This document shows positions 2,443 to 25,558 of a stretch of DNA of 64,000 nt, in pieces. The translations under genes and the position numbers were made by a program. The notes below the pieces were generated by a model. It ran no database searches. It saw only the letters and a list, made by a program, of their open reading frames with translations, and was not told the origin of the DNA. Every line of letters starts with the position of its first letter. Position 1 is the stretch's first letter. The stretch spans positions 124,001 through 188,000 of the IMG/VR virus record IMGVR_UViG_3300020147_000065, one strand, 5' to 3'.

Positions 2443-4481
2443 TAACCAACCTCTTGTTCTCGCCAGTTCTTACCACCGTCGTATGAAATCAGACGATGGG
2501 CTGGGTTCTCCTGGCCTGTTTGTAAACCGTTTATGATAAGTGTAGCTGTGGCCGATTTCATTGTAACGAGGTCGAAACCATATGTGTTTTCTTTTCTTTT
2601 TTCGGCTACGTGCATTATTGGTCCCTCGTTTTTCTGGATAAACAGGTGCTTACCAGACTCACCGAGGTAGTATCTCGCTCCTTGGTACTTTACGCTATCA
2701 AGAATTTTGATTAACTTATTGCCGTCGAAAATTGATTCTCGGAATACTTCACCGTTAAGGAATTGTTCTTCCCAGTGTTTTCCACCATCATGTGATATGA
2801 ATCGGTGGTTCTGTGCGGCAATCGTCATGTAACCACGACCGGGTGTTTGGTCTTCTTCGATGCGATAGTCGTTATCCTTATCTTTTCTACCCACGGGGTA
2901 AATATAATCCCAGCTATCACGACTTGTCTGATAGAATAACCAGTCACCTTTCTCAGCTAATACCTGTATTTCACCGGTATTCTTACGCGTCACATCAAGC
3001 AGTGCGTAACCTTTTTCTTCATTAAACAAGCTTTTCTGAGCATTATCCTGTTTAATGTAGATATAAGGATCATAGTTTCCCATTCCATCCGAAATGTAAA
3101 CACTGATACCGTTGTTTTCTTGAGTCAACGCATAAATGGGTCCACCCCTTTTACGAACGAGTAGAGCGCCACTTGCACCTTTGATGACTTCCTGATGGCC
3201 GATTTCAGAGGTCATATTTCCGGTGTCGTCGGCTATCCTCTTACCGATTGTGATACTACCGTTTGCGTTAGGTTGCACGAGGTGATGTACACGATTGGGT
3301 GTGCGAACACTGCCAACCACGGTATTACCAAGTTCATAAGAAAACTGCCATTCGGCAGCACGTCCTCTTTGTGTGAAAGCAGTCGAGGAAAAGCCGTCCA
3401 TAATCAATTTAAGTTTAGAACCATTTGGAATTCTAAACTTATAGATTGGACTGTACCACCAGCTACTTACGATACCGCCGTTGTCCGTGAACTCGTTACC
3501 GTTGTTCGGGTCCAGTGACCCGAACTCGGCTCTGTTACCCCAAAGCATTGATTTATAGGTTGGATGATCGGGTGTTAGTTGTCCAGGATTCTTATAATTT
3601 AAAACCGTGTCAAGACCACCAATAGTCATTGTCTGTATTTCACTTCGACAATGGTTGTTATTGAAGATTTGAACGCTGATGGCATCACTATAAGTCACTT
3701 CGCTTCCAGAGACAGCTTTGATGCGATAGAAGTATTCCTGTCCAAATTGCGCGGAAGTGTCCGTAAACAAATAGCGTGTAGTAGAACCGGGCTGCAACTG
3801 CATTCCGCCGGGAGGACCAATATTTGGAGCATTCCAGTTAATCGTAATTTGCCCATCCTGGCTACCATTATCAACTCCTCGGTCAATAAATAATTTAACC
3901 GGAGCAGAAGGATCATTAATGTTCTTTGGTAAGCCATCATAAATAATGTTTACACCCTGTTCAGGGGCACCATAAACGTTACTCTTAGCTATCAGTAATG
4001 GTGGATTAGGAATTTCTACAACATAGTCATCAGGAATACGCTGCACACGCTTGGGTTTATATGCATCAGTTCGATCCTGTCCCTCTGTCCATAAGAAGTC
4101 GTTAAGGCTTGCACCGCCCAAACCACCAAAAATGAAGAACATGGCGTTGATACAAATATAAACGCGCTGCCAGAAGATTGTATTTCCACCTGGGTCTTCG
4201 ATACGATACTCGAATACACCCAATTTATTTTGTAATACGATATTGGGAACACTCATTATAGGCGCGACAGCACTCACGGGAGGTAGCATTCCGGCTCCCT
4301 CCCGTGGATAGGCTTCCCAAAAGATATTTTTCTTTAACTGAAATGCGGTGATGTCTCCACCACCGGTATCAAGCTGATAAACCCATATCTTTCGTGTAAC
4401 AAGAGGAGGACCGAGGTCTAAAACTTCCTCGGCCTCATCTGTTGACTTGAATGGTTTCCAGTTTCCAAAAGGTGCTTGCAT
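2442..4481 (-). CDS. Tail protein with FN3-like and Asp-box/BNR-like motifs
   Basis: 679 aa directly after the tape measure gene; FTDTSAQFGQEYFYRIKAV is FN3-like; two SxDGGxxW Asp-box motifs (SHDGGKHW, SYDGGKNW). Confidence 0.65.
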   Translation of the reverse strand: MQAPFGNWKPFKSTDEAEEVLDLGPPLVTRKIWVYQLDTGGGDITAFQLKKNIFWEAYPREGAGMLPPVSAVAPIMSVPNIVLQNKLGVFEYRIEDPGGNTIFWQRVYICINAMFFIFGGLGGASLNDFLWTEGQDRTDAYKPKRVQRIPDDYVVEIPNPPLLIAKSNVYGAPEQGVNIIYDGLPKNINDPSAPVKLFIDRGVDNGSQDGQITINWNAPNIGPPGGMQLQPGSTTRYLFTDTSAQFGQEYFYRIKAVSGSEVTYSDAISVQIFNNNHCRSEIQTMTIGGLDTVLNYKNPGQLTPDHPTYKSMLWGNRAEFGSLDPNNGNEFTDNGGIVSSWWYSPIYKFRIPNGSKLKLIMDGFSSTAFTQRGRAAEWQFSYELGNTVVGSVRTPNRVHHLVQPNANGSITIGKRIADDTGNMTSEIGHQEVIKGASGALLVRKRGGPIYALTQENNGISVYISDGMGNYDPYIYIKQDNAQKSLFNEEKGYALLDVTRKNTGEIQVLAEKGDWLFYQTSRDSWDYIYPVGRKDKDNDYRIEEDQTPGRGYMTIAAQNHRFISHDGGKHWEEQFLNGEVFRESIFDGNKLIKILDSVKYQGARYYLGESGKHLFIQKNEGPIMHVAEKRKENTYGFDLVTMKSATATLIINGLQTGQENPAHRLISYDGGKNWREQEVG

Positions 4482-7400
4482 TACGTAGCCTTATTTAATT
4501 GGAATCGGTCACGCTTAATGACCTGAACGTTTACAGTATAATCTGAGTCCTGCACGTAGTTGGTTTTAACAGCAGGGGTACCAGCGGCAACCGATGCACC
4601 CTGTATTCTTCCCAAACGCTGCATTGCCTCAGCATCGCCACCAGCTTTGTAGTTACCACGACCAAAGTCGTAAGTATCCGCATGATTCAACCTGTTCATC
4701 AAAGTGTTTGGTAACACATGTGAACCTTGAGGTAACATGACCGCTTCTGGACCACGTTCTCCTACGATAGTTAAACCACCGGCAGCACCGCCTCGTGCTC
4801 TCTTTGGAGTGGCCTCAGCAAGAATTTGTGCTTGTCGAGCTAACAAATCTTTACGACGTGCTCCGCTGAATTTACCAAGCTGTGTATCAGCTAACTCGTT
4901 CAAACGAGCTTCGCTTGAAGCCGAAGCGAGTTGCTTGAGAGCTTCAGGTCCCATTACCGCTGAGTACATGTTTACGAAGTTCTCGTCTTTCAAAGCTTGC
5001 ATACCGGAAGTGTTGATTTTCCAGCGAAGTTGTTCTTTATTCAACTTCTGCAAAGCTTCCATCTGCTCTGACTTCTTAACCTGACCCATAGCCAAGGCAC
5101 CTGTGATTCTATCCACATCTTTTGATGTGTAAGCATCTTCGATTTCTGCGTTGGCAAGAAATTCCTGGATTTTTTCTCCTCTTCTTTCATTTGTAATCAA
5201 ACGACTTTTACGGATTTTATCCATTGCTTCTGCGCGTTTTCTTGCTTTCTCTTCAGGAGTCATGTTGACCTTTGCTTTGAGATCATCTCTCAACGCAATT
5301 AGGTTTTCACGAGCTTCGTCGGTTCGCATTTCTGGAGCGGCAAACGCTCCAAAGCTACGAGTCTTAACTCCTTCTTTATAGTCACCTGTAGCCGCGGCAA
5401 TTTGCTCATCAACAACTGTACCGGCAATTTCTTTACGATAACCTGCGATACTCTTGTCAATGTTCTTGGCACTACCATAGGCATTTCTTGAGAAATAAGA
5501 ACCAAAATATGCACCGGGTAGCGAGAATAGGTTTCCGATGGCACCTACCGCTGTTTCAGCAGCCCACCACAATGGGTTCTTCCATGCTCCATTCTTGAAT
5601 GGATTCTTGGCCCATGTTCCTGCGCGACCATAAGAAGCAAAATTTTCCTGCTTCTGTTTCTCGGCCTGTAGTAATGCAATTGCTTGCATACTTTCTGATA
5701 TTCTACCAATAGGCTTACCGTCTGGTCCAACACCACCCATAGTAGCTTCCCATGCCATAGAATCTCGTTCTGTGACGTTAGCCGCAGAGATAAGACCAAA
5801 TGCAACAGGCGCAGCAACAAGTGATGCGGGTCCTGCTGCGGCAGCAATGCCACCCAAACCAAGCCCACCTAACGCTGCTCCTATCTGAGGTAATGCGGTT
5901 ACAGCAACAGCACCGAGCATTTTATTACCCGCACGTCCGCTTCCAACTCCATAACCAAAACCACTACCTTTGAAAAGGTTTAATGAATCCATACGATCAT
6001 CATACCATGAGTCGGTACCGTAGTTTCCTACTCGGCCCATGCGACGTTCGTGTTCTATTCCTGCTTGTTCAACGTCGAGAGTGTCTTTCATTGATAGACC
6101 GGCACCAAGTACCTGACCGGCAGGACCAAGAGCATTGAATATTTTTCCACCGGTACCGCCACCTGCTCGAAGCAGTGTCGCACCGACACCTTCAGTAGCA
6201 AGTCTGCCTGAAGCAAAGTTTCTACCCCACTGTGAACGTGATAATAGGGACGATACTGTACCACCATCCTTTAATGGTGGTACAGCCATTGTTATAGTAG
6301 CTGCTGTAGTAGCACCATCAACAAGTCTGGCTTGATTACGGTATCTTTCGATAATCTCTCTTTCAGCTTTAGCTCTCTGTTGATCGTTTAATCCGGCATC
6401 AAGAGCTTCCATCTCCCTGGCTTGCGCCTGTTGTAGGTAGATGTGAGCGGCCATTTGAAGAGTACCAACGTTACCATAGGCTGCCCATGCACGACTACGG
6501 AATGCACCAACACCACTTCTTGGAGTACCATCTGCTTTTAGACCCAACGCAAGGAAGTCGTTAGCTGTCATTTGTTGATCACCTAACGCGAAATCCCATG
6601 CTCTTTGTCCAAAGCCGCCGACACCTCTTGTGTTGAAACCACCTTGTAGTCCCGCAACACCGGCACCCTGTTGTGCGACGAAGTCCTGGATGGCAAGACG
6701 ATGGTCACGATAACCGCCATCTTCATAGAATCGCTTGTATGCAGCCGACTTTGATACATCACGAGCACCCGAAGAATCTTGTGTTATTCCTTCGAACATA
6801 CTTAGGAAGTCTGCGATAGAGCGACCACCAAAGATGGCTGTGGTGTTACCAACGAGTCCGCGAAGGCGTCGCATACGATATTCGCCGCGCTCGTTTGCTG
6901 ATGCTCCCTCTGATATGTCTAATCGTGTAGAAGCACCAGTCTTACCCTTTTCGTAGTTATCAGGATCAATTAAATTGTTTAATCTGTTACGTAAATTGGT
7001 TGCGTCACCACCACGGGTCTCGGTACGCACGATACGATCCATAAGATCGTTAATTAATTCTGCGTTTCCTCGTCCGGTGAATCGGTTAACGTCATTGCGA
7101 CCTACCTTGGTGGACTTACCTGTACCGAGTACAGCAGCTTCGTTGGCTTTGATAGCCGCAGCAGCTTCAGTAATAGCGTCAACACCGACACTAGCTGGAT
7201 CAGTGTCAATCCAGTTACCACGAGCGTCTACACCGTCAACAGGCATCCATTCACCCGTGGCCGGCAATCTGCGGAACGATTGTTCCATACCATTAGACAA
7301 ACGAGTACGAACAACATGGTTACCACGATAGCGGATGGCTTTTACACCACCTGCTTCGAGGCCAACCACGGATGGATCAAGAATACCTGATCCAGTATTG

Positions 7401-10400
7401 AACCACTCGTTACCAACAGTTGCGTTTCGGTTGATAGCCTGGCTTACACGGAATGACCTGTCTGCACCAACTAATTCTTCTGATACAAAAGAGAATAGAC
7501 GCTGTTGTTCACTTATTCCTGTTGTGGGATCAACAATACCGGCAAGATCACCGATAGCATCACTGAAGCCGAAACCGGCCAACATAGTTTTTCCGCCACC
7601 AACATCTGTACCGGCGAGAATATTAAAACCAGCGCCTCTATGATTAAAAGATGTGGGATTTCCTGTACCGTCAAGTGTAACACCAAATGACTTACGCATT
7701 GTTTCCATTACGTCGTCAAATGATAGGTATCTGTCAGCCGTAGGATGACTGTGCATAACTGTTTGGTTAGCATTGTAATCCCAACCGGTTAATGGATCAA
7801 TTGAAACACTGGATGCATTTCCTGTGTTTGACGATAGAACACCGCGCCCTGCTTGCCATAACACGGCTTGTTCGTTGCCTGTACCGAGCATGGAAGCCAT
7901 TACATCGGCTGTAGCGGTTGAGTGGAAATCGCCGCCTACGGCCCCAGTAGCCGTAGAAGCGGCCTGAGCAAAGGCGAGACGATTACCATATCTTCCGGTA
8001 AACGAACCAGTTGCGTGAGCACTACGAGCAGCAAGAACTACCTGCGCTCTTTCCATATCCTGATCAATTTGAGTATTACGCTGTAGTGCCTGATCGTGTG
8101 CTCTACGCGCGGCATTGTATTGTCTGGTTATCTCAGGATCATTTTCACCAGCATTTATACGGGCGAACAATTCGTTGCGTCGTTCTTGTAGGATGTCTAA
8201 TTGCGTCTTTCCATCGGGACCACGCAGACGAAGCAGATCGCGCTCAATACGAAGTTCATTGAGGTTATGAGCAGCTTCCTGGGCTTCCAGATGACGCAGT
8301 TGATTAGATTTATCCGCACCCAGTGGTCGGTTTAATACCTCAGATATATCACGTTCTTTACGTAAGCTACTTAGTAGATCAGTATCAGGTGCCTGAACAA
8401 CAGATGAACCCGAAAGGATACTTGCTATATCATGAGTACCAGTAGCATAAGTTCTCGATTGTCCACCAAAGGCATTGAACCCGAAGGTCATGCGTGAAAA
8501 CGCTTCCAATCCTCTCTGTGAGAAGCTGGATGCAAGTGCGGTTGTCTTACCGGTTTGAATATCAGGACTCCACTCACCAAAACGAGCGCGGTAGGGTTCA
8601 CCAAGTCGAGTAACAACCTCATTCCATGCGTTTGAACGACGCAGGAAGTTGCTGCTATACTGATCTTGCATCTGCGTATAAAACGCATCTTGTAATGCTG
8701 TATTTTTTCCAGCTTGACGTTGTGCTGCAATATATTCTGCAATACGTGGTTCACTTTGCCATGCAATTAAAGTATTAGGATCAACTGTGTGAGATACACT
8801 TCTCCCAGTCTCAGCTTGCTGTTGTAAAAACGAATCAAAGGTTATAAAAGAGTCTAACGTTGAGTTACGATTTGGCCCACCCACAAAAAGGTTATGGGCC
8901 TTAACTCTTTGTAATAAATCGGCTCTATCTGAATCAGATATACCTCTTTTTAATTCAGGTGGTAATCTTTCTTCAGGTACTTCAAGTAAAACATTTCCAT
9001 TATTATCAAGAAGCGTTTTACCTCTCTGTACCCTAAATCTAGTATCTCTTTCCGCAGAGTCTTCTCTACCAATAGTTGTGGTATAGTTTTCAGGAGAATC
9101 CCCGAAACCGCTTAGTGAACTACCTGTAACAGCCGAGAAAGGTAATCCATGACCAAAGTAGGTATCATTAACATTCTGGTGAATCATGAAGTTACCTGAC
9201 GCATCAGTGTACTTCAACATAGAGTCGGCCCAAACCTCAAATGATCTTTCACCAAGTACTGCTGGTACTCCACCACCACCACGACGGCGTTCAACTAAGT
9301 TTTCCTTGTTGGCTGCTTGTTGTTTCTTTAGATTTTCTAAAAGAGTTTCTCCACCTACGTCAGAAAGGTCTACCCAATCTTGATTGTAAGCTTTTTCACG
9401 GAAACTATTTAATCTTCTTATTGTTTCTTCATTGTCCGGTGATGCAAGAGCAGATTGTTGTAATTGCTGCGCTAATTCCCGCACGAAAATTAACGGGTTA
9501 GCACCACTTTCTCCGTAATTATAACGACCGGAAATTAACCCTTCAACTCTTGGGTCTATGGGGGCCAATTCAGCAGACAGTTGACTTGTTAAAGGACCAG
9601 CTCCTCCTTCACCTGCAATAGCCTCAGCTAATAACATGTAGTTGCGAACATCTGTTTTAGGTGCTTTTCCTTCAGCTTCAAATTGAGAGAATGCTTCAGT
9701 AAATATACCACCCCATTTACCGGCAATTGTTGATGGGGTTCGAGGAACTGTATTAATTTGTGATACAAGATGATTATAGGTTTTTTCAATATAAGAAGCT
9801 TTAGTTGCTTTATCAACCTTCATCCCTTTTGCTTTTAGGTTTTCGTCAACAAAAGTCTTAGCTTGAGCACGTAATTCCTGTGAACGAGTTAGGGCCTTGG
9901 AAGTTATCTCACGATTTGCTTCCATTTCTGTCTTTTGCGCTCGAATAGCGTTGAGTTGAAGTTCGTCTTTTACTACATTCCAGGCGTCATTACCGGTTAA
10001 TGTAGGATCAGCTTGTACCTTCTCCAACATTTTCTGTATAGGATAAGAATAAAATGCTCCTTGTGCATTCGTCTTTCTATCTAAAATACCGAAAACGTGG
10101 GGATCAACATCCATTCCTAATTCTGCCATTAGGAAGCTTGGAATTCCAGTTAAATCAGCAACAGCTCTTCTTTGCTGTTCTTCGTTGAAACTTTTAAGAT
10201 CAGTTCTAAAACCAACTGTACTCGGATGTTGAATCAAAGCCGTCTGCATTTTTTCATGCACAAGATGTTCAGCAGATAAAGAAGGAACACCTTCAAATCC
10301 ACCAATAAGACCACGCATTATTGCATGACCTTGATTATCAAATTCTGTATTTGCTTTTAATGATGCAATAACTCCGGTTTGTGCATTGGTTCTTGCGGCA

Positions 10401-12410
10401 ACACTATCCTTTTTCTTAGCAGCAGCAATAATACTGCGATGTTCATCAGTTCCAGCTAATTTTTTAGCCGTATCCAGGTCCACACTTGTACGATACATGG
10501 ATTGCATATATCGGTCTTGTAAAACCTTGATACCTTTGGCTGCGTTTTCACCCGTAGATTCTTTAATGTCGGACCACAGTTCACCAACAGGTTTATCAAA
10601 TAGTTCTCTTTCAGACGTAGCATCACCGATGGCTTTATGTGGAATACCGGAATTACCAAAGTTATAAGCATCATTGTCTCTAACACGACCTAAACGCTCA
10701 ACTTTATGCATACGGTGATTAGGAATAACATGAGAGCCTTCCGGTAGAACGACAGCCTCAGGTCCACGCTCACCAACAATGGTAAGACCACCTGATTTAC
10801 CACCCATAGCACGGTTTTCTACTTCGTAAAGAGGCTTTGAACGATCTCTCTGAATGTCCGGCTGACCAGGAGAACGTAATTCTCTAATTCTGATGGGAGG
10901 ACCACCAGTATCATCCGGTGCTTCGATTTGACCGGAAGCAATAGCACGAAGAATAGGACGGTTATCTTCGCCTGGGAATTGTAGACGCTCTTTTTGACGA
11001 CGCTCAATTTCAGCACGAGCAGCCTGACCGAACAAGTCCTTTGTGTCAAGTTCTTGACGAGAGGTGCCGAAACGCTCTTTCATCTCGTCGTTTTCTTTAC
11101 TGGACTGTCCTTTCAAGTATCTACCAAGCATGTAGGTACCAAGAGTAGCAGCACCAACAAGTGGCATAACACGCTTCATCATGAAGCCGCCAAAGCTACC
11201 CTGGAACTGTCCAGACATCAATGAAGCAGTATACATAGCTGTGCTGAAACGCATGATAGGTCCAGCAGCCGCACCGAACATGAGGGCCGTAAACTGGATT
11301 TCGGGGCCTAAGCCACCGAAAGCCTTAACCATCTTGTTGGCGATAGGGATAACGTCTCGGCCCATCTTGATGGCACCGAAGATAACGTCCTGCATAGCAA
11401 TACCAAAGTCAGCAAGTTCTTTGGTATAGGCTGCCATAACCAGACGCCCCTGGTTGGCCGCAGAAGTAGGATACGACTTTAAGAAGTCACCCTGAGCGTT
11501 CTGCGTCTGGTTCATGATTTCACCGAAGGCTGCAAGAACCTTCTGTTGCTTATTTAATTCAGAACCAACTTCAGCAATACCGTTTTTGTATGCGTAGTTC
11601 TTTAGTGTTGTCTGGTCAAGCGACACACCATAAGAGTACAAAGCACGGGTGTTACCGATCATACCTGACGCGAGGTTGGTCATAACCCTTTCTACAGGTA
11701 AGTCATAGTACGAGGACATGTCAATGCCCAACTGTACCATAGCCTTCGACATTTCCAGAGCTTCTCCGCGAGGAATCTTCAAAGCTGTGGCCAGGTTCAT
11801 GAAGATAGCAGCCTGACGACGAACCTCATATTCGTTCATCGAACTGGCTTTACCAAGACGTTCAGAGAAGTCCTGAATATCTTTGTACATGTTACCGAAT
11901 GTACGACCGGCAAGGTTTTCTGATTCTAATACGGCAGAACCGAACTTTACTCCGAAAGCGGCTGCCGCCATTTCCATCGAGGAGAATGCTTCACCGACAA
12001 ACTGTGCTCCAGTGGCAAAAGCCATACTGTTTGTTTGGGCAGTTGTGCCAAGGCGTCCGTACTGTTGACCAACGGTACGGAGCTGGTTCATCATCTGGTT
12101 ATCAGGTGTTATCGTGTGGGCTTTTTATCCCTCACTTCTTATAGTTTCCTATAAGTTCAGCATATATTTTCATCCTAATAGGATGTTCGGCACTCGTGGA
12201 GGGATTATATTCTTGAAAGTTTCACCCTCTATGCGTTACACTGATCTGAACTCTTTAATTTTCAGATTTAGCTCGGTATTCCCATGGTTACCTTTAGGGT
12301 TCACCGATTTTGCCGAATTTTCACCAATAAATTACTTTATTGGGGACCATAACCTTAGTGATTTAGCCACTTAACACAAATCTAGTTGCAAGGATGTCGG
12401 TGATTTGCAA
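4481..12410 (-). CDS. Tape measure protein, spliced (exon 1 12410-12365, exon 2 12102-4481)
   Basis: 2537-aa ORF with TMP-like N-region (MVQLGIDMSSYYDLP...LASGMIGNTRAL) and GG..VGERGPE motifs; removing the intron gives in-frame MQITDILATRFVLSG-Y-NQMMNQLRT from a TTG start preceded by AGAGGT. Confidence 0.88.
12103..12364 (-). ncRNA. Group I self-splicing intron (262 nt, no internal ORF) in the tape measure gene
   Basis: Minus strand shows P3 UUCGGCA/UGCCGAA, P4 UCGGU/ACCGA, R-like UGUAACGCAUAG, S-like AAAAUAUAUGCUG, terminal G, and IGS GGUUAUGGUC pairing both exon ends (GGCU and AUAACC) with a U-G pair at the 5' splice site. Confidence 0.88.
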
Positions 12411-12415
12411 TCTGT

Positions 12416-13213
12416 TTACCTCTGTAAAACTTTATTCCATTTTCTTTGTAGTAAAGGAAGTCTTGAGTCGACCTGTGCTACAAAATCTTTTGTTTGCTCT
12501 TTAGTAAATCTCAATCTAAAAATAGAATTGAAAGCACCAAATGAACAAGGATACTGTACCATTGTCCCAATCCAACTGACCACTTTTGATGTTCCCAAGA
12601 AACTCATAGTTTTATTAGTTTCTACGTATCCATCACCATCAAATAATCCACATACGAATGCTATACTACATTCATGATTCAAATTTGTTGGTGGCTCAAG
12701 TATTAAAGACTTAGCAGGGATAATTCCAAAGTTTTCCTTCAGATCTTTAATCCACTGTGCTGCTCCACAAACAGTTAATCTTGTCCAGGGTCGAGGATTT
12801 GTTTTAGAAAATCCTCTATCATTCATGCCCTCATACAATTTCCCGTTAAAACCTACCTGAGACGCAAAAAGTTCCAGATGAACTTTATCTTTGCTATCCA
12901 GTTGGACTGATACTTGTTTATTTCTTGGGGTATCAATTATCCAACCGTCTGCGGCTAAGAACCCTGCCCAATAACTATTCAAAGGTGTTGGGTAAGTAAA
13001 GAAAGAAGAATCATACTCTAATTTCTTGTTCTTTTTACCGATAGCTGATTTAGCACATCTGGAACATTTCCAGTTTTCTTTTACGTATTGACGCTTTGTT
13101 TCTTTCTCAAGATTACAATCAGGACATTTCACGCAGACTAGTTTGTTAGAGCCTGATGAAAGTTCTAAGGGATTGTAACCAAAAGTAGACAAAGTTTTCT
13201 CGAACATTATCAT
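12416..13213 (-). CDS. Free-standing LAGLIDADG homing endonuclease with N-terminal zinc ribbon
   Basis: Two motifs YWAGFLAADGW and FVCGLFDGDGY; N-terminal CPDC...CSRC. Confidence 0.9.
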   Translation of the reverse strand: MIMFEKTLSTFGYNPLELSSGSNKLVCVKCPDCNLEKETKRQYVKENWKCSRCAKSAIGKKNKKLEYDSSFFTYPTPLNSYWAGFLAADGWIIDTPRNKQVSVQLDSKDKVHLELFASQVGFNGKLYEGMNDRGFSKTNPRPWTRLTVCGAAQWIKDLKENFGIIPAKSLILEPPTNLNHECSIAFVCGLFDGDGYVETNKTMSFLGTSKVVSWIGTMVQYPCSFGAFNSIFRLRFTKEQTKDFVAQVDSRLPLLQRKWNKVLQR

Positions 13214-13227
13214 AGCAAACCAGACAC

Positions 13228-13740
13228 TTAATAGTTTTTCAGGTTGCTCTTTATCTTATCCAAGTTCTTACAGTATTCTTCTACACCCTTCATTGTAAAA
13301 GTAGTATGTACAGCGTCTTTTGTTGTGTAACCTAAATCTGCGATTGTTGCGTAGATGTTGTATAAACGCTCCAATCGGATTGCCCGTTTTTCGTTAAGTG
13401 GAGAACTGTAGCTTCTATCGAGCACAAGTAATCGGGCACCGACAATTTCTCGTATATTATCTGAAGTAGAAAGACCTTTTTCGTCAATAAGTCTTCGTAC
13501 TTCTTTTTCGTTCAGAAGAATACCTTCATTTCTCATCTCTGACGTTTGTCCAACAAGTAAGCTTCGTAAGATTAAATGAGCCACAATATCATGTGGTTTA
13601 TCAAATATTTTAGCTATCCACACAACGAGATGAACACCTGTGTGCGCGTTCTTACGAGCGTCGGCTTCCGTAAAGCCGACGGCTTTGAAGAGATGAAAAA
13701 ATCTGATAAAGTGTTTTTGAGCCAAGAATTCAAGTAACAT
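13228..13740 (-). CDS. Hypothetical protein in tail module
   Basis: 170-aa ORF packed in the operon between chaperone-like genes and the endonuclease. Confidence 0.6.
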   Translation of the reverse strand: MLLEFLAQKHFIRFFHLFKAVGFTEADARKNAHTGVHLVVWIAKIFDKPHDIVAHLILRSLLVGQTSEMRNEGILLNEKEVRRLIDEKGLSTSDNIREIVGARLLVLDRSYSSPLNEKRAIRLERLYNIYATIADLGYTTKDAVHTTFTMKGVEEYCKNLDKIKSNLKNY

Positions 13741-18065: not shown

Positions 18066-19190
18066 TTAGAAGATGGTGTAGGAAGTGGGAGCTACATATT
18101 CTGTCGCAGCAGAATCAATGTAAAGAACCACAACCTTGTGACGCTGCCAAGGAGCAATTCCGTAGTAGCGGTCGAACACTTCCGCGTGTAGCGGATAGGT
18201 GCGATGCTCGTAACGAAGTCCGAGTTCAGCGTTGCGTCCACCGGGCATTACACGGTAAGCGAGAGGCTTGTCGCCAGGCTGACCGAGGTCGGCTACAACA
18301 AGATACTTCTGAGGTACCCAGCTACGAACGGTAACAAGAGCACCGTCGAAGTAACCGATGTTACGGTTGTACTGGTTCTCGAAGTCGAGAGTCTCGCCAA
18401 CAGCGTAAGCGCGGTTGGGGTCAACTACGTTGGCCTGAGGGAAAGCGTAGAAGCTACCGTCAGATGCGAAGTTGAAGAATGCCTGTACGAAGGCGTTCGA
18501 GATGAAGATACGGACACGTCCGCTTGTTCCATGCTCACGAAGGTTGGTTAGTGCAGAGCGTACAGCCGTGCGGTCCAACTCAGTCGCGTACATGTAGTGG
18601 TTGTGTGTATCAGGATCGAACAACGTGCCATCAATAGCAGCAGGAACGGGCTTGCCGTCGCCATTAAGGAAGGCGTAGATGGGGATAGAACGATAGTCTA
18701 CCATGTAGTCTTCGTAATCCTCATCGTTTGTGGGGTTGAAGATCGCGTTCATCAAAGTGGTGCGGAAGTCCGCAACGTCACCAAGAAGAATAGCGCGTAC
18801 TGTCAACTGGAACTTAGCCAGAGACATTTCTTCAAGCGCACGGGTTGTCCACTGGACAGCCGCTTCGGACTTCTCAAGAGGGAAGCCCATTGTGGTACCA
18901 GTACGAACCTTCGATACGAGCGGGTTCGAATACTCGTTACCACGGACCATGCGGATGCGGGGTACGCCACCGTACACGGCCTGATAGTCGGTTGTAACCT
19001 GGCAGAGTTCATCTACCATTTCTGCAACCAACGAGTTATGAATCTCAAGAACACGAGCTACTTCAGCGTAAGCCTCTTCTTCACCGAAATCGGCTACGGA
19101 GATTTCGCCGGTATTAACTCCACCGAAGTTAAGAACTGGGCTGGTGTCTCTAAGATCGTGTGTGCCTAATCCCATTAGTTCACTTGCCAT
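18066..19190 (-). CDS. Major capsid protein
   Basis: 374 aa after scaffold and decoration genes; strong AGGAGTG SD; distinctive high-expression-like codon usage; HTHY-like HNHY motif seen in related capsid proteins. Confidence 0.8.
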   Translation of the reverse strand: MASELMGLGTHDLRDTSPVLNFGGVNTGEISVADFGEEEAYAEVARVLEIHNSLVAEMVDELCQVTTDYQAVYGGVPRIRMVRGNEYSNPLVSKVRTGTTMGFPLEKSEAAVQWTTRALEEMSLAKFQLTVRAILLGDVADFRTTLMNAIFNPTNDEDYEDYMVDYRSIPIYAFLNGDGKPVPAAIDGTLFDPDTHNHYMYATELDRTAVRSALTNLREHGTSGRVRIFISNAFVQAFFNFASDGSFYAFPQANVVDPNRAYAVGETLDFENQYNRNIGYFDGALVTVRSWVPQKYLVVADLGQPGDKPLAYRVMPGGRNAELGLRYEHRTYPLHAEVFDRYYGIAPWQRHKVVVLYIDSAATEYVAPTSYTIF

Positions 19191-20449: not shown

Positions 20450-22186
20450 TTAGGTATTATTTGACCCTCCAGCGACCGATTGGGACGCTACTGAGCGACT
20501 AATTGATGTTCCGGGGCTATTTCCACCGGATGCTGGAGCGGTGCCTGAAGCACCGCGAACAGCCTTAGCTGCTTGTGATGTTTGTGGGGTTGCCGAAGCT
20601 CCAGAAGGTACAATATACTTCTGGGCAACAGCGGATAACGTCTCCGCTTCCTCCTTCATTTCTGCAAGTTTTCGCTTGCGTTCTTCTTCACGCAACGTCT
20701 CAATTTCAGTTAAATCTTCTTCACTATATCCTTCTTTTATAAGAACATATTTTAGAGGAATATCTGCTCTCATTGCCGCTGCATATGAAATATATTTTTC
20801 ACGATTTGTAATAGCCTGGTCATATTCGGTTAGTTCGATAACCGGACGAGGATTAATCGTAAAGTCGAGATCACCTTTTGCGTAGGAATCCATATTGAAC
20901 GATAAGAATTTCTTCTGTTGTTCATTTAGGACAGCCCAGCCAGTGCCCTGCGCACGTTCGTTGGCTCTCATTCCACCAATTGCTACAAGCATTCTAAAAA
21001 GAGAAATAGTAGCATGGTCGTAATTCTTTGAAGCCTGTCTAACAGCGTGAACCAAGTCACCGAGAGACTTACCAACTGCCGGCCCCGTGGTTTGCGATAA
21101 TGTTTTTAGATAAGCATATACAGTAATCTCAGGGTGATCGTCAAGGATTTCCTGCCATGTATCTTTTAATACACCTACTGTTTGAGCAATATCAAGGTTA
21201 CCATCTAATTTATGAACTGAACCGTTTTCCGATGCTACTAAAAGAAACATGTCTTCGAGTAGGATAGGGCTGCCATCCAATTCAGAAGTAGGAGGGTTAA
21301 CGGTGCCCATGCCAGCAAGCAGGTTAGGAGATACGGATTGCTTGCGAAGATACATGCGCAAGCGAGTATAATCTGAGTTATATTCCTCGATTTTTCTCCA
21401 GTCTCTAATTGCAGGTTTTCCGGGAAGGAGATGAACACCAGGATCATTGTGTTTGCACCACACTAATGGACAAAAACCATAAGGGTTTTCATAGACAGGT
21501 GGAAGACCTTCATATCCGTAAGGATCGTCATTACGGAAAGTACGAATTTCTGTCTTAGTAACTTGCTTTTTCTTTGTGTAATATTCCTGTTTATCAGGGT
21601 CCCAAACTTCGATTACCTTCTCATACTCGATTACGTTTCCACGCGGGTCGAACTTAACGTCGGTAATTTGTTCCGGGCGAAGAACAGTCGGATATACCTG
21701 ACCACGGGTGAGGTCATCTGTGGCTTCTACGGGACCGTCTCCAAGAGAAGCACAATAGGTGATCCAGGTTGTTATATTACTTTCCCAGTTACCCCACTGC
21801 CAGATTTGACCAATAGCCCGACGTAGTTCGTCGGGCGTTTTGTCACTTAGAGGAATAGCAAGAGGAATATTATTGGCTACAGGATAGCCTGTGCTTGATA
21901 GATAGCCAGGATAGATATGAGATGCGTAAAACGAAACTACTCGTGAGAAAGGATTTTTAACACAGATAGTTTTTGGATGTAAGTCACGCTGCTTGAGATA
22001 AGGCCCCCACTTCTTGTTATCAACAAAAATGGTATTATCCAAAGCATTCTGCATCACATAATACTGAAACAGACGCTTTTCGTAAGTGCTGTTTGCAGGG
22101 TTGATATTTTCAAAGTTGTACCAGCGCGACTTGTATGAACCAAACAACTCGCTACCCATTCTGGCCACTCTACCTAATAGACTCAT
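20450..22186 (-). CDS. Portal protein
   Basis: 578 aa directly downstream of TerL; YENPYGFCPLVWCKH resembles the SPP1-type portal NPxGxxPxV motif. Confidence 0.85.
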   Translation of the reverse strand: MSLLGRVARMGSELFGSYKSRWYNFENINPANSTYEKRLFQYYVMQNALDNTIFVDNKKWGPYLKQRDLHPKTICVKNPFSRVVSFYASHIYPGYLSSTGYPVANNIPLAIPLSDKTPDELRRAIGQIWQWGNWESNITTWITYCASLGDGPVEATDDLTRGQVYPTVLRPEQITDVKFDPRGNVIEYEKVIEVWDPDKQEYYTKKKQVTKTEIRTFRNDDPYGYEGLPPVYENPYGFCPLVWCKHNDPGVHLLPGKPAIRDWRKIEEYNSDYTRLRMYLRKQSVSPNLLAGMGTVNPPTSELDGSPILLEDMFLLVASENGSVHKLDGNLDIAQTVGVLKDTWQEILDDHPEITVYAYLKTLSQTTGPAVGKSLGDLVHAVRQASKNYDHATISLFRMLVAIGGMRANERAQGTGWAVLNEQQKKFLSFNMDSYAKGDLDFTINPRPVIELTEYDQAITNREKYISYAAAMRADIPLKYVLIKEGYSEEDLTEIETLREEERKRKLAEMKEEAETLSAVAQKYIVPSGASATPQTSQAAKAVRGASGTAPASGGNSPGTSISRSVASQSVAGGSNNT

Positions 22187-24855
22187 CTTCTATAGCCTCC
22201 ACCGAAGTGTCGTTGCATATAATCTGCGGTTGCAGATGTGATTATAGTTTTACCGGACCTCACTTCGGCTTCTGCCATTGCCAGATTAAATGCGTCCGCA
22301 TCGTCAGGAGATTCTTTCAGACGCTTTTTCATGAGGTCTTTCTTCTCTACTTCCCGACGGGTTTCTTTGATACCAGGACGCAAAATATATTTGGCGGCTT
22401 TTAGCTGACGGCCTAAAATAGCCCAGGATTCTCCACCTTCGCATTCTTCTATGCGTGAAATGTCAATTCCGGCCTTTAAATCACGATCTGTAGAATCTAC
22501 ATTATTAGCTTTATCAGCCGAGATAAACCAAAGTTCACTACGACGATTAGGATAACGATCCTTATTGTAAGCCTGTGCAGAAGAGTCTACTCCGACGAAA
22601 TTAAAGTTTCCTTTGTGAGTATATACAGCGTTGTTACCTGTAATATCAATCATGATGGGAACTGTTTCAGCAGTCATTCCCGCATGATCTCTTCCCCACA
22701 CTCCGGCCAAAACCTTTAATCGGTCAGCCGTCATAATTTCATCCCAACCGTGATGTCGCTCATGCCAGAGAACAGTCTTCCCTCTGCGAACAACGATGGC
22801 CGTTTTGTCGGCACCACGTCCAGCAGGGTCACAACCGATTTGAACAGGTTCGTCAATGTCTTCCGGTTGCTGTTCTTTACAGGCTTCCCACATGGCCTCA
22901 GACCACAGGGTATTATCAGAGCCGGACGGCCAACGACCAAGAACACGAGGTTCGAAGTCACTGGCAGCCCGTGGTCGGTAATAATATCTTTCCCATGACT
23001 CAGGCAACTCATATTGTTTACCAAAGTAGGTAATAATACGAGGTGGCCATTCAAAGTCACCAAGTTTGGCTGCGTCAGAGGAAATTATTAAACAGTTTTC
23101 CACTATACGGTCATTCACCCATTGAAGGTTCATGTCAATTCCAGGAAAAGGAATTCTTGATGGATCACTGTCGAATAAAAGGTCGGCAAGCACGTTAGGA
23201 TGGTTTAAGGCAGAAAGCCTGATAACCGTCCATGTTTTATTGTTTTCCGATTCCCAGTAAGCTCTCGATGAGATGTCTACAGGGTTAAGAAGACAAAGCC
23301 ACTTCGCGTTGGGGCGAATTAACATACCACGGGCGTCTTCCCAGAAGTCAGCCATGATACCGTCCGCCTCATCGAAGATAAGCATCAGGTTTTCAGATTT
23401 ACGACCACGGAAACCAGCACCGGTAGCAGCCACTAAACCTTCGGCATAATGCGTAACGCTACTCTGCATACGAGAAGCCGAGGGTTTTAAATCCCACATG
23501 CTTTCAGGAAGACGATAACGATGGTTGCGAACTTCTTTCCAGATGATGTCATCAACTGACTTCTCTGTTGGAGCAGTGGTAATCGTAATAGATTCCGCGA
23601 AAGCATCGTAATGCCAGTTGGTCAGTGCCCCGGCGAGATAGCTATTATGCTCATATAAAGAAGTAAGATAGCTTTCAGGACCAGGAACACAGATAGCAAC
23701 TGTTCGCTGTTTTCCCTGCGGTACGATCTCGGATACTTTCTCCCAGTATGTTCCGGGAGGTGCGTCTTTTAATCGCCAGTCAAGACGATTATCGGGATTA
23801 CCTTCTGCAAGAAACTCATTATCTTCGAATACACGAACGTAGTCTTCGATATTGAGTACACGAGCAACCCAGAAATCCTCGCCGTCCTTTTTGTAGACCT
23901 TGCAGGAAATACCGAACTTTAGTAGAGCAAATGCGAGATCACGGATCAATTCTTCAGAACGATGATAGAATTTAACCTTAGCTTCAACATTGTTCTTAAC
24001 AACGAGGGTATTGCAACTAAGCAGGGTCTTGATGAATAGACGTAGCTGGTCTTTCTTTAAAGTGAAGATGGCTTCAGGAATACGACGCTGTTTAAATGAT
24101 TCTGTAATCAGATACTTATTGAAAAGATGCAGGATTGGCCCGGCACCGACAATCTTCATGCGGCTTTGTGTCTGATCATAGAAAAGATCACCAATTTTAC
24201 CATCAAGAAGACCGACAAGTTGTGCGAACTGTCTCTCGCCTTTTTTAATAAGAACGACTTCTTTATCACGAATGAAACAGGATGTAAGCAGATGTGCCAA
24301 AAGTTTGACCTCATCTTCCTCAATTTCATCCTGCCCAAAGGCGGGAAATTCACGAGTTACTGCAACCAGATCACCTGTGGATATGCAACCCACGGATGTC
24401 CATCCGTTCACTGTAGTCTTGAACTGTTTTCCTGTCTTTACATTCTTAGCGGTCCATAGCGGATGCTTATTGTTGACGATAACACGGCGACCGGACTCGG
24501 TGATTACTTCATAAACGTCTTCATATTCGTTCCATTCGGCTGTTGCTTCAACTTCACGAATTCCGTCAGGTGTAGAGGTTAACGTTTTAAATGTTTTCCC
24601 CACAACCTGTTTGGCCTTTACTTTACGGCCATCCGAAAGGTAAACCCAGTCGGATTCTGCTTTACATTTACCAGATGAGTGGCAAGAAAGCACCATGACT
24701 CGTTTATTCTCGATTAGAGCGCGAGTAATCGCCTCTTGGTCGGGAGTAATACGAGTTCTTAGTTGGTCATTAATATATGCAATTGGGTCATCCGCGTATT
24801 CAGGAAATCGAGCCGTCTTCGAGGGCTGAGTGAGAGTTCTCACTATGTCCCCCAT
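22183..24855 (-). CDS. terL: Terminase large subunit containing an intein
   Basis: Walker A SCHSSGK/S split by the intein, Walker B LIFDEADG, nuclease IGCDPAGRGAD and C-terminal SPDDADA; likely start MGDIVR at 24855 (ORF open from 24930). Confidence 0.92.
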   Translation of the reverse strand: MGDIVRTLTQPSKTARFPEYADDPIAYINDQLRTRITPDQEAITRALIENKRVMVLSCHSSGKCKAESDWVYLSDGRKVKAKQVVGKTFKTLTSTPDGIREVEATAEWNEYEDVYEVITESGRRVIVNNKHPLWTAKNVKTGKQFKTTVNGWTSVGCISTGDLVAVTREFPAFGQDEIEEDEVKLLAHLLTSCFIRDKEVVLIKKGERQFAQLVGLLDGKIGDLFYDQTQSRMKIVGAGPILHLFNKYLITESFKQRRIPEAIFTLKKDQLRLFIKTLLSCNTLVVKNNVEAKVKFYHRSEELIRDLAFALLKFGISCKVYKKDGEDFWVARVLNIEDYVRVFEDNEFLAEGNPDNRLDWRLKDAPPGTYWEKVSEIVPQGKQRTVAICVPGPESYLTSLYEHNSYLAGALTNWHYDAFAESITITTAPTEKSVDDIIWKEVRNHRYRLPESMWDLKPSASRMQSSVTHYAEGLVAATGAGFRGRKSENLMLIFDEADGIMADFWEDARGMLIRPNAKWLCLLNPVDISSRAYWESENNKTWTVIRLSALNHPNVLADLLFDSDPSRIPFPGIDMNLQWVNDRIVENCLIISSDAAKLGDFEWPPRIITYFGKQYELPESWERYYYRPRAASDFEPRVLGRWPSGSDNTLWSEAMWEACKEQQPEDIDEPVQIGCDPAGRGADKTAIVVRRGKTVLWHERHHGWDEIMTADRLKVLAGVWGRDHAGMTAETVPIMIDITGNNAVYTHKGNFNFVGVDSSAQAYNKDRYPNRRSELWFISADKANNVDSTDRDLKAGIDISRIEECEGGESWAILGRQLKAAKYILRPGIKETRREVEKKDLMKKRLKESPDDADAFNLAMAEAEVRSGKTIITSATADYMQRHFGGGYRR
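23644..24666 (-). mobile_element. Intein (341 aa) in TerL Walker A with degenerate LAGLIDADG domain
   Basis: Starts CKAESDWVYLSDG, block B VIVNNKHPLW, ends YEHN followed by Ser; removal restores SCHSSGKSYLAG. Confidence 0.9.
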
Positions 24856-25558
24856 CAAGGACTCTTGAAGCTTTCGTTGCGGTTTCCACGAGAATTCTTG
24901 TGGCAAGGTCTTTATCCTCCAAACGATCAAAAACTACTCCTCGCAACTCGCCCATTACGCGGTTGATGAGGATTTTCACATCAGCGGCTCGCATCATCTG
25001 ATCCAATTGGATATTACGTTTATGCTGAGCCTCTACAAGGTCTTTCTTAGTGCGGATCATACCTTTAATTTCGTCCATCAGGGCGAAATCACGTCCCGCA
25101 CTTTCGATGATGCCACCCATTTGGGCAAAAAGGGCGTTGAATTTGTTCCAGTCCTTTTGATTGGCAGCATCTACACATTTTTCATAATGCTTTAAAATTC
25201 TGGCAATGGCTCCGCCACCTTCGCCGTCACCATATTCGAATTTACTACATAACTCATCAATTAGAGCCTGTGTAAGAGCAATTTCAGGCATGAGTTCGAG
25301 AAGCAGAGGATCATTGGCGGCTTCCTGCATCTTCGGGCCTAATCTTGTTTTCTTTAATGATTCAATGTAACGTCCATCCACGTATGTACCACTCTCCGCT
25401 CCAGATTTACTTCTTCCACCGTGGAAATAGCAAACCTTTTTACCTTTCATAGCCACGGCACCACAGGGCACAAGTTCTTCAGCTTTATCCTTGCGTCTCT
25501 TGTGACCCTGACACCTGGGAATCCATTTGTTTATGTCCCTTCCCTTCGGGTTCGGCAT
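24800..25558 (-). CDS. Terminase small subunit-like protein (HGGxSTG zinc-finger domain)
   Basis: RC...PC...CYFHGGRS motif; immediately upstream of TerL. Confidence 0.7.
   Translation of the reverse strand: MPNPKGRDINKWIPRCQGHKRRKDKAEELVPCGAVAMKGKKVCYFHGGRSKSGAESGTYVDGRYIESLKKTRLGPKMQEAANDPLLLELMPEIALTQALIDELCSKFEYGDGEGGGAIARILKHYEKCVDAANQKDWNKFNALFAQMGGIIESAGRDFALMDEIKGMIRTKKDLVEAQHKRNIQLDQMMRAADVKILINRVMGELRGVVFDRLEDKDLATRILVETATKASRVLDGGHSENSHSALEDGSIS

What the first reader, a model, noticed from the sequence alone, without database searches (positions are those of the whole stretch)
12103..12410. Group I intron in the tape measure gene, with a 46-nt first exon and a variant P7
Seen: a full group I core; IGS GGUUAUGGUC pairs exon 1 end GGCU and exon 2 start AUAACC; splicing 12364-12103 turns a TAA into TAT and joins MQITDILATRFVLSG to YNQMMNQLRT in frame. 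P7 is GCAUA/UAUGC rather than the usual GACUA/UAGUC, keeping the G-C pair of the guanosine site. Known: phage group I introns mostly interrupt DNA metabolism, terminase or lysin genes. Tail length determination here would depend on splicing.
Basis: partly seen in the sequence, partly recalled or inferred. Interest (0 to 1): 0.75.

Follow-up and report, generated by a model that had tools for sequence, protein, structure and literature searches.

The report
Self-splicing intron in phage tape-measure gene
A 262-base self-splicing group I intron sits 46 bases into the tail tape-measure gene of a 221-kb soil phage, right after a homing-endonuclease gene; it is real and well supported by a related phage, but such introns are already known in phage tape-measure genes.

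Summary
On the minus strand, 12364..12103 is a complete ORF-less group I intron. It scores 56 bits against Rfam RF00028 (cut-off 50), and 36 of 51 predicted pairs covary across 11 relatives.

The proposed splice sites are supported by a related phage (locus L002, tape-measure protein (TMP) 50% identical). L002 encodes the same N-terminal peptide, MQITDILATRF(V/I)LSG(Y/H)NQM, but its intron lies 34 nt further upstream, leaving a 12-nt first exon. Each phage therefore reads uninterrupted across the other's splice junction. Codons 1-19 differ at 9 synonymous and 2 non-synonymous positions. ATG 12094 has no ribosome-binding site.

The novelty framing fails:
- TMP introns are published for Bacillus cereus prophages, Lactobacillus phage JCL1032 and Vibrio phage ICP1.
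- TMP is the commonest host gene of this intron family.
- The "variant" P7 is the family norm.

New here:
- A free-standing LAGLIDADG homing endonuclease gene (12416..13213) ends 6 nt before the TMP start, in both phages.
- A homologue of that endonuclease is intron-encoded in Mammaliicoccus phage phi127.

This layout suggests collaborative homing, which is not tested. No RNA data were found.

Verdict: a new member of a known kind, of moderate interest.

The parts
12419..12423 (-). Shine-Dalgarno AGAGG, 8 nt before the TTG start of exon 1
   Evidence: Read directly from the sequence. L002 has GGGAGAG at the matching place before its GTG.
12365..12410 (-). Exon 1 of the tape-measure gene: 46 nt, TTG start, 15 codons plus the first base of codon 16. 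GGCU at 12368-12365 is the 5' strand of P1.
   Evidence: TTG is the first start codon after the in-frame stop at 12434-12432. The peptide is conserved in L002, with mostly synonymous changes.
12103..12364 (-). ORF-less group I intron, 262 nt, subgroup IA-like. Elements: guide sequence 12354-12345; P2 12343-12324 (GUAA loop); P3 12317-12311 with 12192-12186; P7 12234-12230 with 12164-12160; P7.1 hairpin between P7 and P3'; P9 12155-12138 (GAAA loop); P9.1 12135-12114; last base G12103.
   Evidence: RF00028 at 56 bits; covariation; fold; family HMM E 7e-56.
4481..12102 (-). Exon 2 of the tape-measure gene. The gene-caller ORF starts at ATG 12094, which is codon 19 of the spliced gene.
   Evidence: tblastn matches 255 phage records, the listed ones annotated tape measure protein. 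TMP PHROGs match at E about 1e-10.
12416..13213 (-). Free-standing double-motif LAGLIDADG homing endonuclease gene, 265 aa, with an N-terminal CxxC...CxxC region. Its stop codon is 6 nt before the TMP start.
   Evidence: PF14528 at 34.4 bits (cut-off 22.5) and phrog_4645 at 5e-23. Both motifs and Asp89/Asp194 are invariant in 16 homologues. The L002 orthologue is 35% identical.
13228..13740 (-). 170-aa ORF upstream of the endonuclease. It is a diverged homologue of an L002 ORF that is itself a copy of TMP residues 88-215. It may be a relic of recombination at this locus.

Best explanation
Window 12364..12103 (minus strand) is a functional ORF-less subgroup-IA group I intron inside codon 16 of the tape-measure gene.

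How it works:
- The late transcript carries the endonuclease ORF, then an SD and TTG 12410, a 46-nt exon 1, the intron and exon 2.
- The guide sequence at 12354-12345 pairs with the last four bases of exon 1 (P1, with U.G at the cleavage site) and the first six bases of exon 2 (P10).
- Guanosine-initiated self-splicing removes the 262 nt and turns the junction TAA into TAT.
- The result is a 2555-aa protein starting MQITDILATRFVLSGYNQMM.
- On unspliced RNA, ribosomes make only a 15-residue peptide and stop on P1. ATG 12094 has no SD. TMP synthesis, and hence tail assembly, therefore needs splicing.

Shown: the intron core, its covariation, the pairings, the reading frame and conservation of the peptide across two insertion sites.

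Inferred: catalytic activity and the dependence of translation on splicing.

Second, weaker inference (about 0.4): the neighbouring LAGLIDADG endonuclease cuts intron-less TMP alleles near this site. It would then mobilise itself and the intron together (collaborative homing), with the intron protecting its own genome.
For: The intron is real:
- RF00028 at 56 bits, above the cut-off of 50.
- 36 of 51 pairs are compensatory across 11 family members. P7 shows an A-U to G-C swap.
- The family's 3' end reads GRUAACA-N2-4-UG, and the window fits it exactly at G12103.

The splice sites are right:
- L002 has GTG CAA ATC ACT, then a 244-nt intron, then GAT ATT TTA ... GGC CAT AAC CAG ATG. Its own matching P1 is AUCACU/GGUGAU and its P10 is GAUAUU/AAUAUU.
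- Each phage therefore serves as the uninterrupted reference for the other's junction.
- Codons 1-19: 8 identical, 9 synonymous, 2 non-synonymous. Codons 29-60: 24 non-synonymous.
- An SD precedes TTG 12410 and none precedes ATG 12094.

The endonuclease is linked:
- It is intact and orthologous in both phages.
- A third relative has an HNH-type gene at the same place, followed by 352 nt with no called gene before its TMP start.
- A homologous endonuclease lies inside a same-family intron in the terminase large-subunit gene (TerL) of phage phi127.
- No terminator or promoter was found on this strand between the endonuclease and the TMP gene.
Against: - No RNA evidence: no RNA run could be listed.
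- P5 of the window copy has only three clean pairs.
- No intron-less or endonuclease-less allele was found, so homing cannot be inferred from population data.
- The two insertion sites are 34 nt apart, more than one LAGLIDADG site (about 20-22 bp, own knowledge) would span. A single shared target does not explain both.
- Several close endonuclease homologues are free-standing with no intron nearby.
Confidence: 0.85

Rival explanations
1. The intron splices as described, but the upstream endonuclease is an unrelated neighbour. It would target another site, such as its own intergenic insertion point, or it would have replaced an earlier intron-borne endonuclease (HEG turnover). In that case the intron is now immobile and inherited vertically.
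For: - Close homologues of the endonuclease sit free-standing between phage genes without introns.
- The third relative has a different endonuclease class at the same place. This fits the unstable HEG islands and the turnover idea of PMC10448857.
- The two intron sites are 34 nt apart.
Against: - The endonuclease and an ORF-less intron co-occur within 14-51 nt in both relatives whose DNA could be read.
- The same endonuclease family is found inside a same-family intron in phi127.
Confidence: 0.45
2. The element is a decayed intron that no longer splices. The TMP would then start at ATG 12094 and the 15-codon frame would be meaningless.
For: Gene callers start the ORF at 12094. There are no RNA data.
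Against: - Every core helix and joining segment matches the family consensus.
- There is no SD before 12094.
- The 18 codons upstream of 12094 are conserved at the protein level, with 9 synonymous changes, across two different intron positions.
Confidence: 0.05
3. The intron splices but lies in an untranslated leader. Exon 1 is not translated and translation begins at ATG 12094 on the spliced RNA.
For: The first exon is very short, and both phages use non-ATG starts (TTG, GTG).
Against: - An SD lies at the correct spacing before TTG and GTG in both phages.
- The frame is maintained through both junctions.
- The pattern of synonymous versus non-synonymous changes indicates a translated sequence.
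Confidence: 0.04

Closest known systems
Group I introns TMP-IVS1/IVS2/IVS3 in tape-measure genes of Bacillus cereus-group prophages; Lactobacillus phage JCL1032 TMP intron (Tourasse and Kolsto 2008, PMC2504315)
   Same: - Subgroup IA phage-type introns in TMP genes, inserted in frame, with a stop codon at or just inside the intron start.
- Related introns sit at different sites of one gene, with P1 and the guide sequence re-adapted to each site.
- Most are ORF-less.
   Different: - The intron here lies within the first 16 codons (46-nt exon 1; 12 nt in the relative).
- The host is a 221-kb soil phage with a 2555-aa TMP.
- A free-standing LAGLIDADG gene abuts the gene start.
Vibrio phage ICP1: TMP gene with three introns; TerL intron with a short N-terminal exon next to a free-standing T5orf172 endonuclease (Barth et al. 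2023, PMC10448857)
   Same: - A TMP interrupted by introns, with splicing shown there by RNA-seq and RT-PCR.
- A short unannotated first exon.
- An endonuclease beside the intron rather than inside it, interpreted as collaborative homing.
- Endonuclease classes vary at the same locus among relatives.
   Different: - In ICP1 the adjacent-endonuclease layout is at TerL, and its TMP intron carries an HNH gene inside.
- Here the layout is at the TMP gene, with a LAGLIDADG enzyme.
- There is no transcript evidence here.
Collaborative (trans) homing: cyanophage S-PM2 psbA intron with F-CphI; T3/T7-like phages; T4 mobE with the nrdB intron (reviewed in PMC3984707; PMC2790892; PMC6083498)
   Same: [quoted passage not shown]
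   Different: In those systems cleavage at the intron insertion site was shown experimentally. Here the endonuclease target is unknown.
Mammaliicoccus phage phi127 (PV389080) TerL intron with an embedded LAGLIDADG gene
   Same: The intron belongs to the same family (71% identity over positions 82-258) and the endonuclease is homologous (27% identity, E 1e-10).
   Different: In phi127 the endonuclease ORF lies inside the intron, upstream of P3, and the host gene is by its sequence and position the large terminase (annotated hypothetical protein). Here the endonuclease lies outside, upstream of exon 1.

Membership tests
Group I intron (Rfam RF00028) | Covariance-model score at or above the curated gathering score | tested here: met
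   56.0 bits against a cut-off of 50, E 2e-13 and E 1e-14. The L002 copy scores 39.6 bits, below the cut-off, but aligns with the family.
Group I intron (Rfam RF00028) | Conserved core helices P3-P9, including the P3/P7 pseudoknot, supported by covariation | tested here: met
   51 pairs, 36 with compensatory changes, in P3, P4, P5, P6, P6a, P7.1, P8, P9 and P9.1. P7 was counted by script: five pairs, one with an A-U to G-C swap.
Group I intron (Rfam RF00028) | 5' splice site after a U that forms a U.G pair in P1 with an internal guide sequence; the intron ends in G; P10 pairs with exon 2 | tested here: met
   Window: GGCU/GGUC and AUAACC/GGUUAU, with G12103 last. L002: AUCACU/GGUGAU and GAUAUU/AAUAUU.
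Group I intron (Rfam RF00028) | Guanosine-dependent self-splicing | not testable with these tools
   No RNA run could be listed. This needs an in vitro or in vivo assay.
Subgroup IA (IA2-like) phage introns | Extra P7.1/P7.2 pairing between P7 and P3'; kinship with known IA phage introns | tested here: met
   A P7.1 hairpin with covariation at four of its five pairs, the fifth being invariant. blastn hits to introns of Staphylococcus, Bacillus, Clostridium and JCL1032 phages. The choice between IA1 and IA2 was not tested against a subgroup library.
Tail tape-measure protein | Sequence kinship to annotated TMPs, very large size, and position in the tail module | tested here: met
   tblastn to 255 phage records, the listed ones annotated TMP. 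phrog_7025 and phrog_1535 match at E about 4e-10. The gene lies in the same gene string as TerL and the major head protein, after them. Pfam gives no hit.
LAGLIDADG homing endonuclease | Two LAGLIDADG motifs, each with a catalytic acidic residue; family profile match | tested here: met
   PF14528 at 34.4 bits (cut-off 22.5) and phrog_4645 at 5e-23. The motifs WAGFLAADG and CGLFDGDG have invariant Asp89 and Asp194.
Collaborative-homing pair (ORF-less intron plus free-standing endonuclease) | An ORF-less intron and a free-standing endonuclease gene adjacent at the same gene | tested here: met
   There is no ORF of 40 aa or more on the intron strand. The endonuclease stop lies 51 nt (window) or 14 nt (L002) before the insertion site.
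Collaborative-homing pair (ORF-less intron plus free-standing endonuclease) | The endonuclease cuts the intron-less allele at or near the intron insertion site and spares the intron-containing allele | not testable with these tools
   This needs a cleavage assay.
Collaborative-homing pair (ORF-less intron plus free-standing endonuclease) | Relatives include alleles without the intron and endonuclease, serving as recipients | tested here: inconclusive
   Only three relatives were found. Two were readable and both carry the endonuclease and an intron. The source run shows one allele.

The most novel reading that the evidence does not exclude
The first 46 nt of this TMP gene may be the target zone of the adjacent free-standing LAGLIDADG endonuclease, with ORF-less IA introns serving as its self-immunity. 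In two sister phages the intron sits at different codons (4/5 and 16), each with a re-fitted guide sequence. A third phage has a different endonuclease class at the same spot. In phi127 a homologous endonuclease has already moved inside a same-family intron. Together these would be natural snapshots of the proposed route from free-standing endonuclease plus bare intron to a composite mobile intron. With the 12-nt exon, P1 overlaps the ribosome's initiation footprint, so splicing must come before translation initiation.
Probability: 0.3. Interest if true: 0.55.

Novelty: new member of a known kind. Interest (0 to 1): 0.4.

Why it matters
- Annotation: gene callers start this TMP 18 codons too late. 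They can also call a false 86-aa gene on the opposite strand of the intron. The same errors occur in relatives and in a deposited phage record.
- Biology: the locus is a compact natural case for studying how a bare group I intron and a neighbouring homing endonuclease associate. It is also a case for how an intron is re-targeted by a few dozen bases within one gene. First exons of 46 and 12 nt force splicing and translation initiation to share the same RNA segment.
- Limits: it does not open a new category. TMP introns and adjacent-endonuclease layouts are already published.

Tried and rejected
- The Rfam gathering scan of the whole window found nothing. This was a filter effect, overturned.
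- The search for more TMP relatives gave nothing beyond P0002 and P0003:
  - a viral contigs protein scan;
  - a metagenome-contig scan that returned only the window's own contig;
  - two back-translated peptide patterns in viral contigs.
- DNA of the P0002 contig could not be fetched. Its 352-nt gap, which would fit a longer exon 1 plus an intron at a third site, stays unverified.
- Transcript evidence: no RNA run was listed. The one DNA run holds only the same contig, with no intron-less variant.
- I first read the 67.6% identity between the window and L002 introns as two independent invasions, because the window copy is 77-79% identical to introns of unrelated phages. A 50-member tree and AU test do not reject the two as one clade: p = 0.62, and the constrained tree is better by 8.3 log-likelihood units. 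I dropped that claim. A site shift of one intron and two separate invasions cannot be told apart.
- The idea that the endonuclease lies inside a larger intron is rejected. The segment between it and the core is conserved coding sequence, and that segment is part of exon 2 in L002.
- The PDB sequence search for the endonuclease gave nothing useful.

Full report
**Setting.** The window is part of a 221,108-base IMG/VR virus record from a soil metagenome (CheckV completeness 89%, 43.8% G+C). The genes in question lie on the minus strand, in a structural module:
- the large terminase at 22183..24930;
- the major head protein at 18066..19190;
- smaller ORFs;
- a 2537-aa ORF at 4481..12094.

That ORF matches tape-measure proteins (TMPs). 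tblastn hits 255 phage records, the listed ones annotated TMP, and TMP PHROGs match at E about 4e-10. Pfam gives no hit.

**The observation.** On the minus strand, TTG 12410 follows AGAGG at an 8-nt spacing. It opens 15 codons, MQITDILATRFVLSG, that end in TAA at 12365-12363.
- The sequence GGUUAUGGUC at 12354-12345 pairs through GGUC with exon GGCU. The U.G pair falls at U12365.
- Through GGUUAU it pairs with AUAACC at 12102-12097.
- The base before 12102 is G12103.
- Joining 12365 to 12102 gives TAT AAC CAG ATG, in frame with the long ORF.

**Is it a group I intron?**
- Rfam RF00028 scores 56.0 bits (cut-off 50), E 2e-13, over 12374..12138 when the region is searched alone. In a search of the whole genome it gives E 1e-14, and it is the only hit. 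The default-filter scan of the whole window had missed it.
- The single-sequence fold has z = -4.5 and recovers P2, P3, P4, P5, P6a, P7.1, P8, P9, P9.1 and P10.
- Two conserved motifs retrieved many related elements from viral contigs.
- An alignment of 11 diverse ORF-less members gives 51 consensus pairs, 36 of them with compensatory changes, across P3 to P9.1.
- P7 cannot be predicted by that tool because it forms a pseudoknot with P3, so it was counted by script. It has five pairs, GCAUA/UAUGC, and one member has GCGUA/UACGC.
- A covarying hairpin between P7 and P3' (P7.1, with an optional inner stem) places the element in subgroup IA. Choosing between IA1 and IA2 is my inference and was not tested.
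- Every member ends GRUAACA, then 2-4 bases, then UG. The window fits this exactly at G12103.

**Are the splice sites right?** The best evidence comes from a related phage.
- Only two real TMP relatives exist in the protein collection: P0002 (56% identity) and P0003 (50%).
- P0003's locus L002 has about 300 nt with no called gene between an upstream ORF and the called TMP start.
- Its sequence reads GTG CAA ATC ACT, then a 244-nt intron (3715..3958), then GAT ATT TTA GCC ACA AGA TTT ATT CTT AGC GGC CAT AAC CAG ATG.
- That intron has its own fitted P1 (AUCACU/GGUGAU, with U.G at the site) and P10 (GAUAUU/AAUAUU). It has no P2.
- Spliced, L002 encodes MQITDILATRFILSGHNQM. The window encodes MQITDILATRFVLSGYNQM, the same length.
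- The window's junction codons are therefore contiguous DNA in L002, and L002's junction codons are contiguous in the window's exon 1. Each phage serves as the other's uninterrupted reference.
- Over codons 1-19 there are 8 identical, 9 synonymous and 2 conservative non-synonymous codons. Over codons 29-60 there are 24 non-synonymous codons. This segment is translated and under selection, which requires splicing in both phages.
- ATG 12094 has no purine-rich tract upstream.

No transcript evidence could be obtained.

**Mechanism.** The following is inferred from the established group I pathway, not shown here.
- The guide sequence holds exon 1 in P1, and exogenous guanosine attacks after U12365.
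- P10 aligns exon 2, and the exon 1 3'-OH attacks after G12103.
- On unspliced RNA a ribosome starting at TTG 12410 stops at the UAA that spans the splice site. A stop at or just inside the intron start is the usual arrangement in phage and bacterial introns (PMC2504315, PMC3984707).
- With a 46-nt exon, and more so with the 12-nt exon of L002, an initiating or terminating ribosome would cover P1. Productive splicing must therefore occur on RNA free of ribosomes.

- The ORF 12416..13213 ends 6 nt before TTG 12410. It is a LAGLIDADG endonuclease: PF14528 at 34.4 bits (cut-off 22.5) and phrog_4645 at 5e-23.
- It has two motifs with invariant Asp89 and Asp194 and an N-terminal four-cysteine region.
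- L002 has the orthologue (35% identity) in the same place.
- The P0002 contig instead has a 288-aa ORF with weak HNH and faint HTH hits there. That ORF is followed by 352 nt with no called gene before the called TMP start.
- No terminator or promoter motif on this strand separates the endonuclease from the TMP gene.

A free-standing endonuclease beside an ORF-less intron is the layout described as collaborative or trans homing (PMC3984707, PMC2790892, PMC6083498). Barth et al. noted it for ICP1 TerL (PMC10448857).

In support of a link, a homologous endonuclease (E 1e-10) lies inside a same-family intron in what, by its sequence and its position before the portal gene, is the large terminase gene of Mammaliicoccus phage phi127.

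Against a link:
- Close homologues are free-standing with no intron nearby.
- The two insertion sites are 34 nt apart.
- No intron-less allele was found.

I put collaborative homing at about 0.4 and the bystander or turnover alternative at about 0.45.

**One intron that moved, or two invasions?** The window and L002 introns share only 67.6% identity. The window copy is 77-79% identical to introns in unrelated contigs. However, a 50-member likelihood tree is poorly resolved, and the AU test does not reject the two as sisters (p = 0.62). I cannot tell. A precedent for related introns at different TMP sites with re-adapted guide sequences exists in B. cereus prophages (PMC2504315).

**Comparison with what is known.**
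- Group I introns in TMP genes were reported in 2008 for B. cereus-group prophages at three sites (IA1 and IA2). The same paper lists a TMP intron in JCL1032 (PMC2504315).
- ICP1's TMP has three introns confirmed by RNA-seq and RT-PCR, and TMP is called a frequently interrupted gene (PMC10448857).
- Among 63 distinct exon-2 contexts of this intron family, TMP PHROGs are the most frequent match: up to 9 members for one family, with several further TMP families. Large terminase and Sak4-like proteins follow.
- The P7 sequence is shared by more than 113 viral contigs.

This is therefore a new member of a known kind. Its particular points are the extreme 5' position, the two insertion sites in sister phages, and the abutting LAGLIDADG gene.

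**Verdict.** Interest is 0.4.

Noticed in passing
L002:2322-2879 (+); window 13228..13740 (-): In L002 the 185-aa ORF just upstream of the endonuclease is 59% identical (E 5e-53) to residues 88-215 of that phage's own TMP. It is 54-56% identical to the same segment of the other two TMPs, so it is a partial TMP copy. The window's 170-aa ORF at the same place is a much more diverged homologue (23% identity, E 4e-7). It may be a scar of recombination at this endonuclease locus, or a gene in its own right.
   Followed up: partly
window 22183..24930 (-): The 915-aa large terminase ORF carries a LAGLIDADG_3 domain at residues 294-368. The terminase profile matches only from residue 449 onward. This suggests an intein with a homing endonuclease in TerL.
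   Followed up: partly
window 12114..12374 (+): An 86-aa ORF on the opposite strand lies entirely over the intron and is probably a false gene call. The deposited record PQ006093 annotates similar small opposite-strand 'hypothetical proteins' over its related intron.
   Followed up: partly
window 4481..12094 (-), P0001 residues 441 and 2445: The motif GGLTIVGERGPEAV(V/M)LP(E/Q)GSHV(I/L)PN occurs twice in this TMP, nearly identical, at residues 441 and 2445. It occurs once, near residue 441-449, in the two relatives. Similar G-E-x-G-P-E motifs lie next to intron sites in other TMPs of the family.
   Followed up: no
own genome outside the window, G000:C1:195374-216555: ARAGORN finds 36 tRNA genes clustered there. 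Two have suppressor-like anticodons, CUA and UCA. The TMP and endonuclease ORFs are open under table 11 and the stop at the intron start is TAA, so this does not affect the finding.
   Followed up: no
P0002 contig (JGI sample 3300048101; no DNA obtained): The third relative's TMP is called from a Met that aligns with residue 8 of P0001. It lies 352 nt after an HNH-type ORF. That length would fit a longer exon 1 plus an intron at a third insertion site, but this is unverified.
   Followed up: partly
L004 (PQ006093.1 6405-6698), L005 (MZ417338.1): The intron most similar to the window's (79% identity in the 50-member alignment) is in bajarodcaudo virus 2, where it is unannotated. A Staphylococcus/Mammaliicoccus phage (PG-2021_4) has a same-family intron whose downstream exon looks TMP-like from its sequence.
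   Followed up: partly
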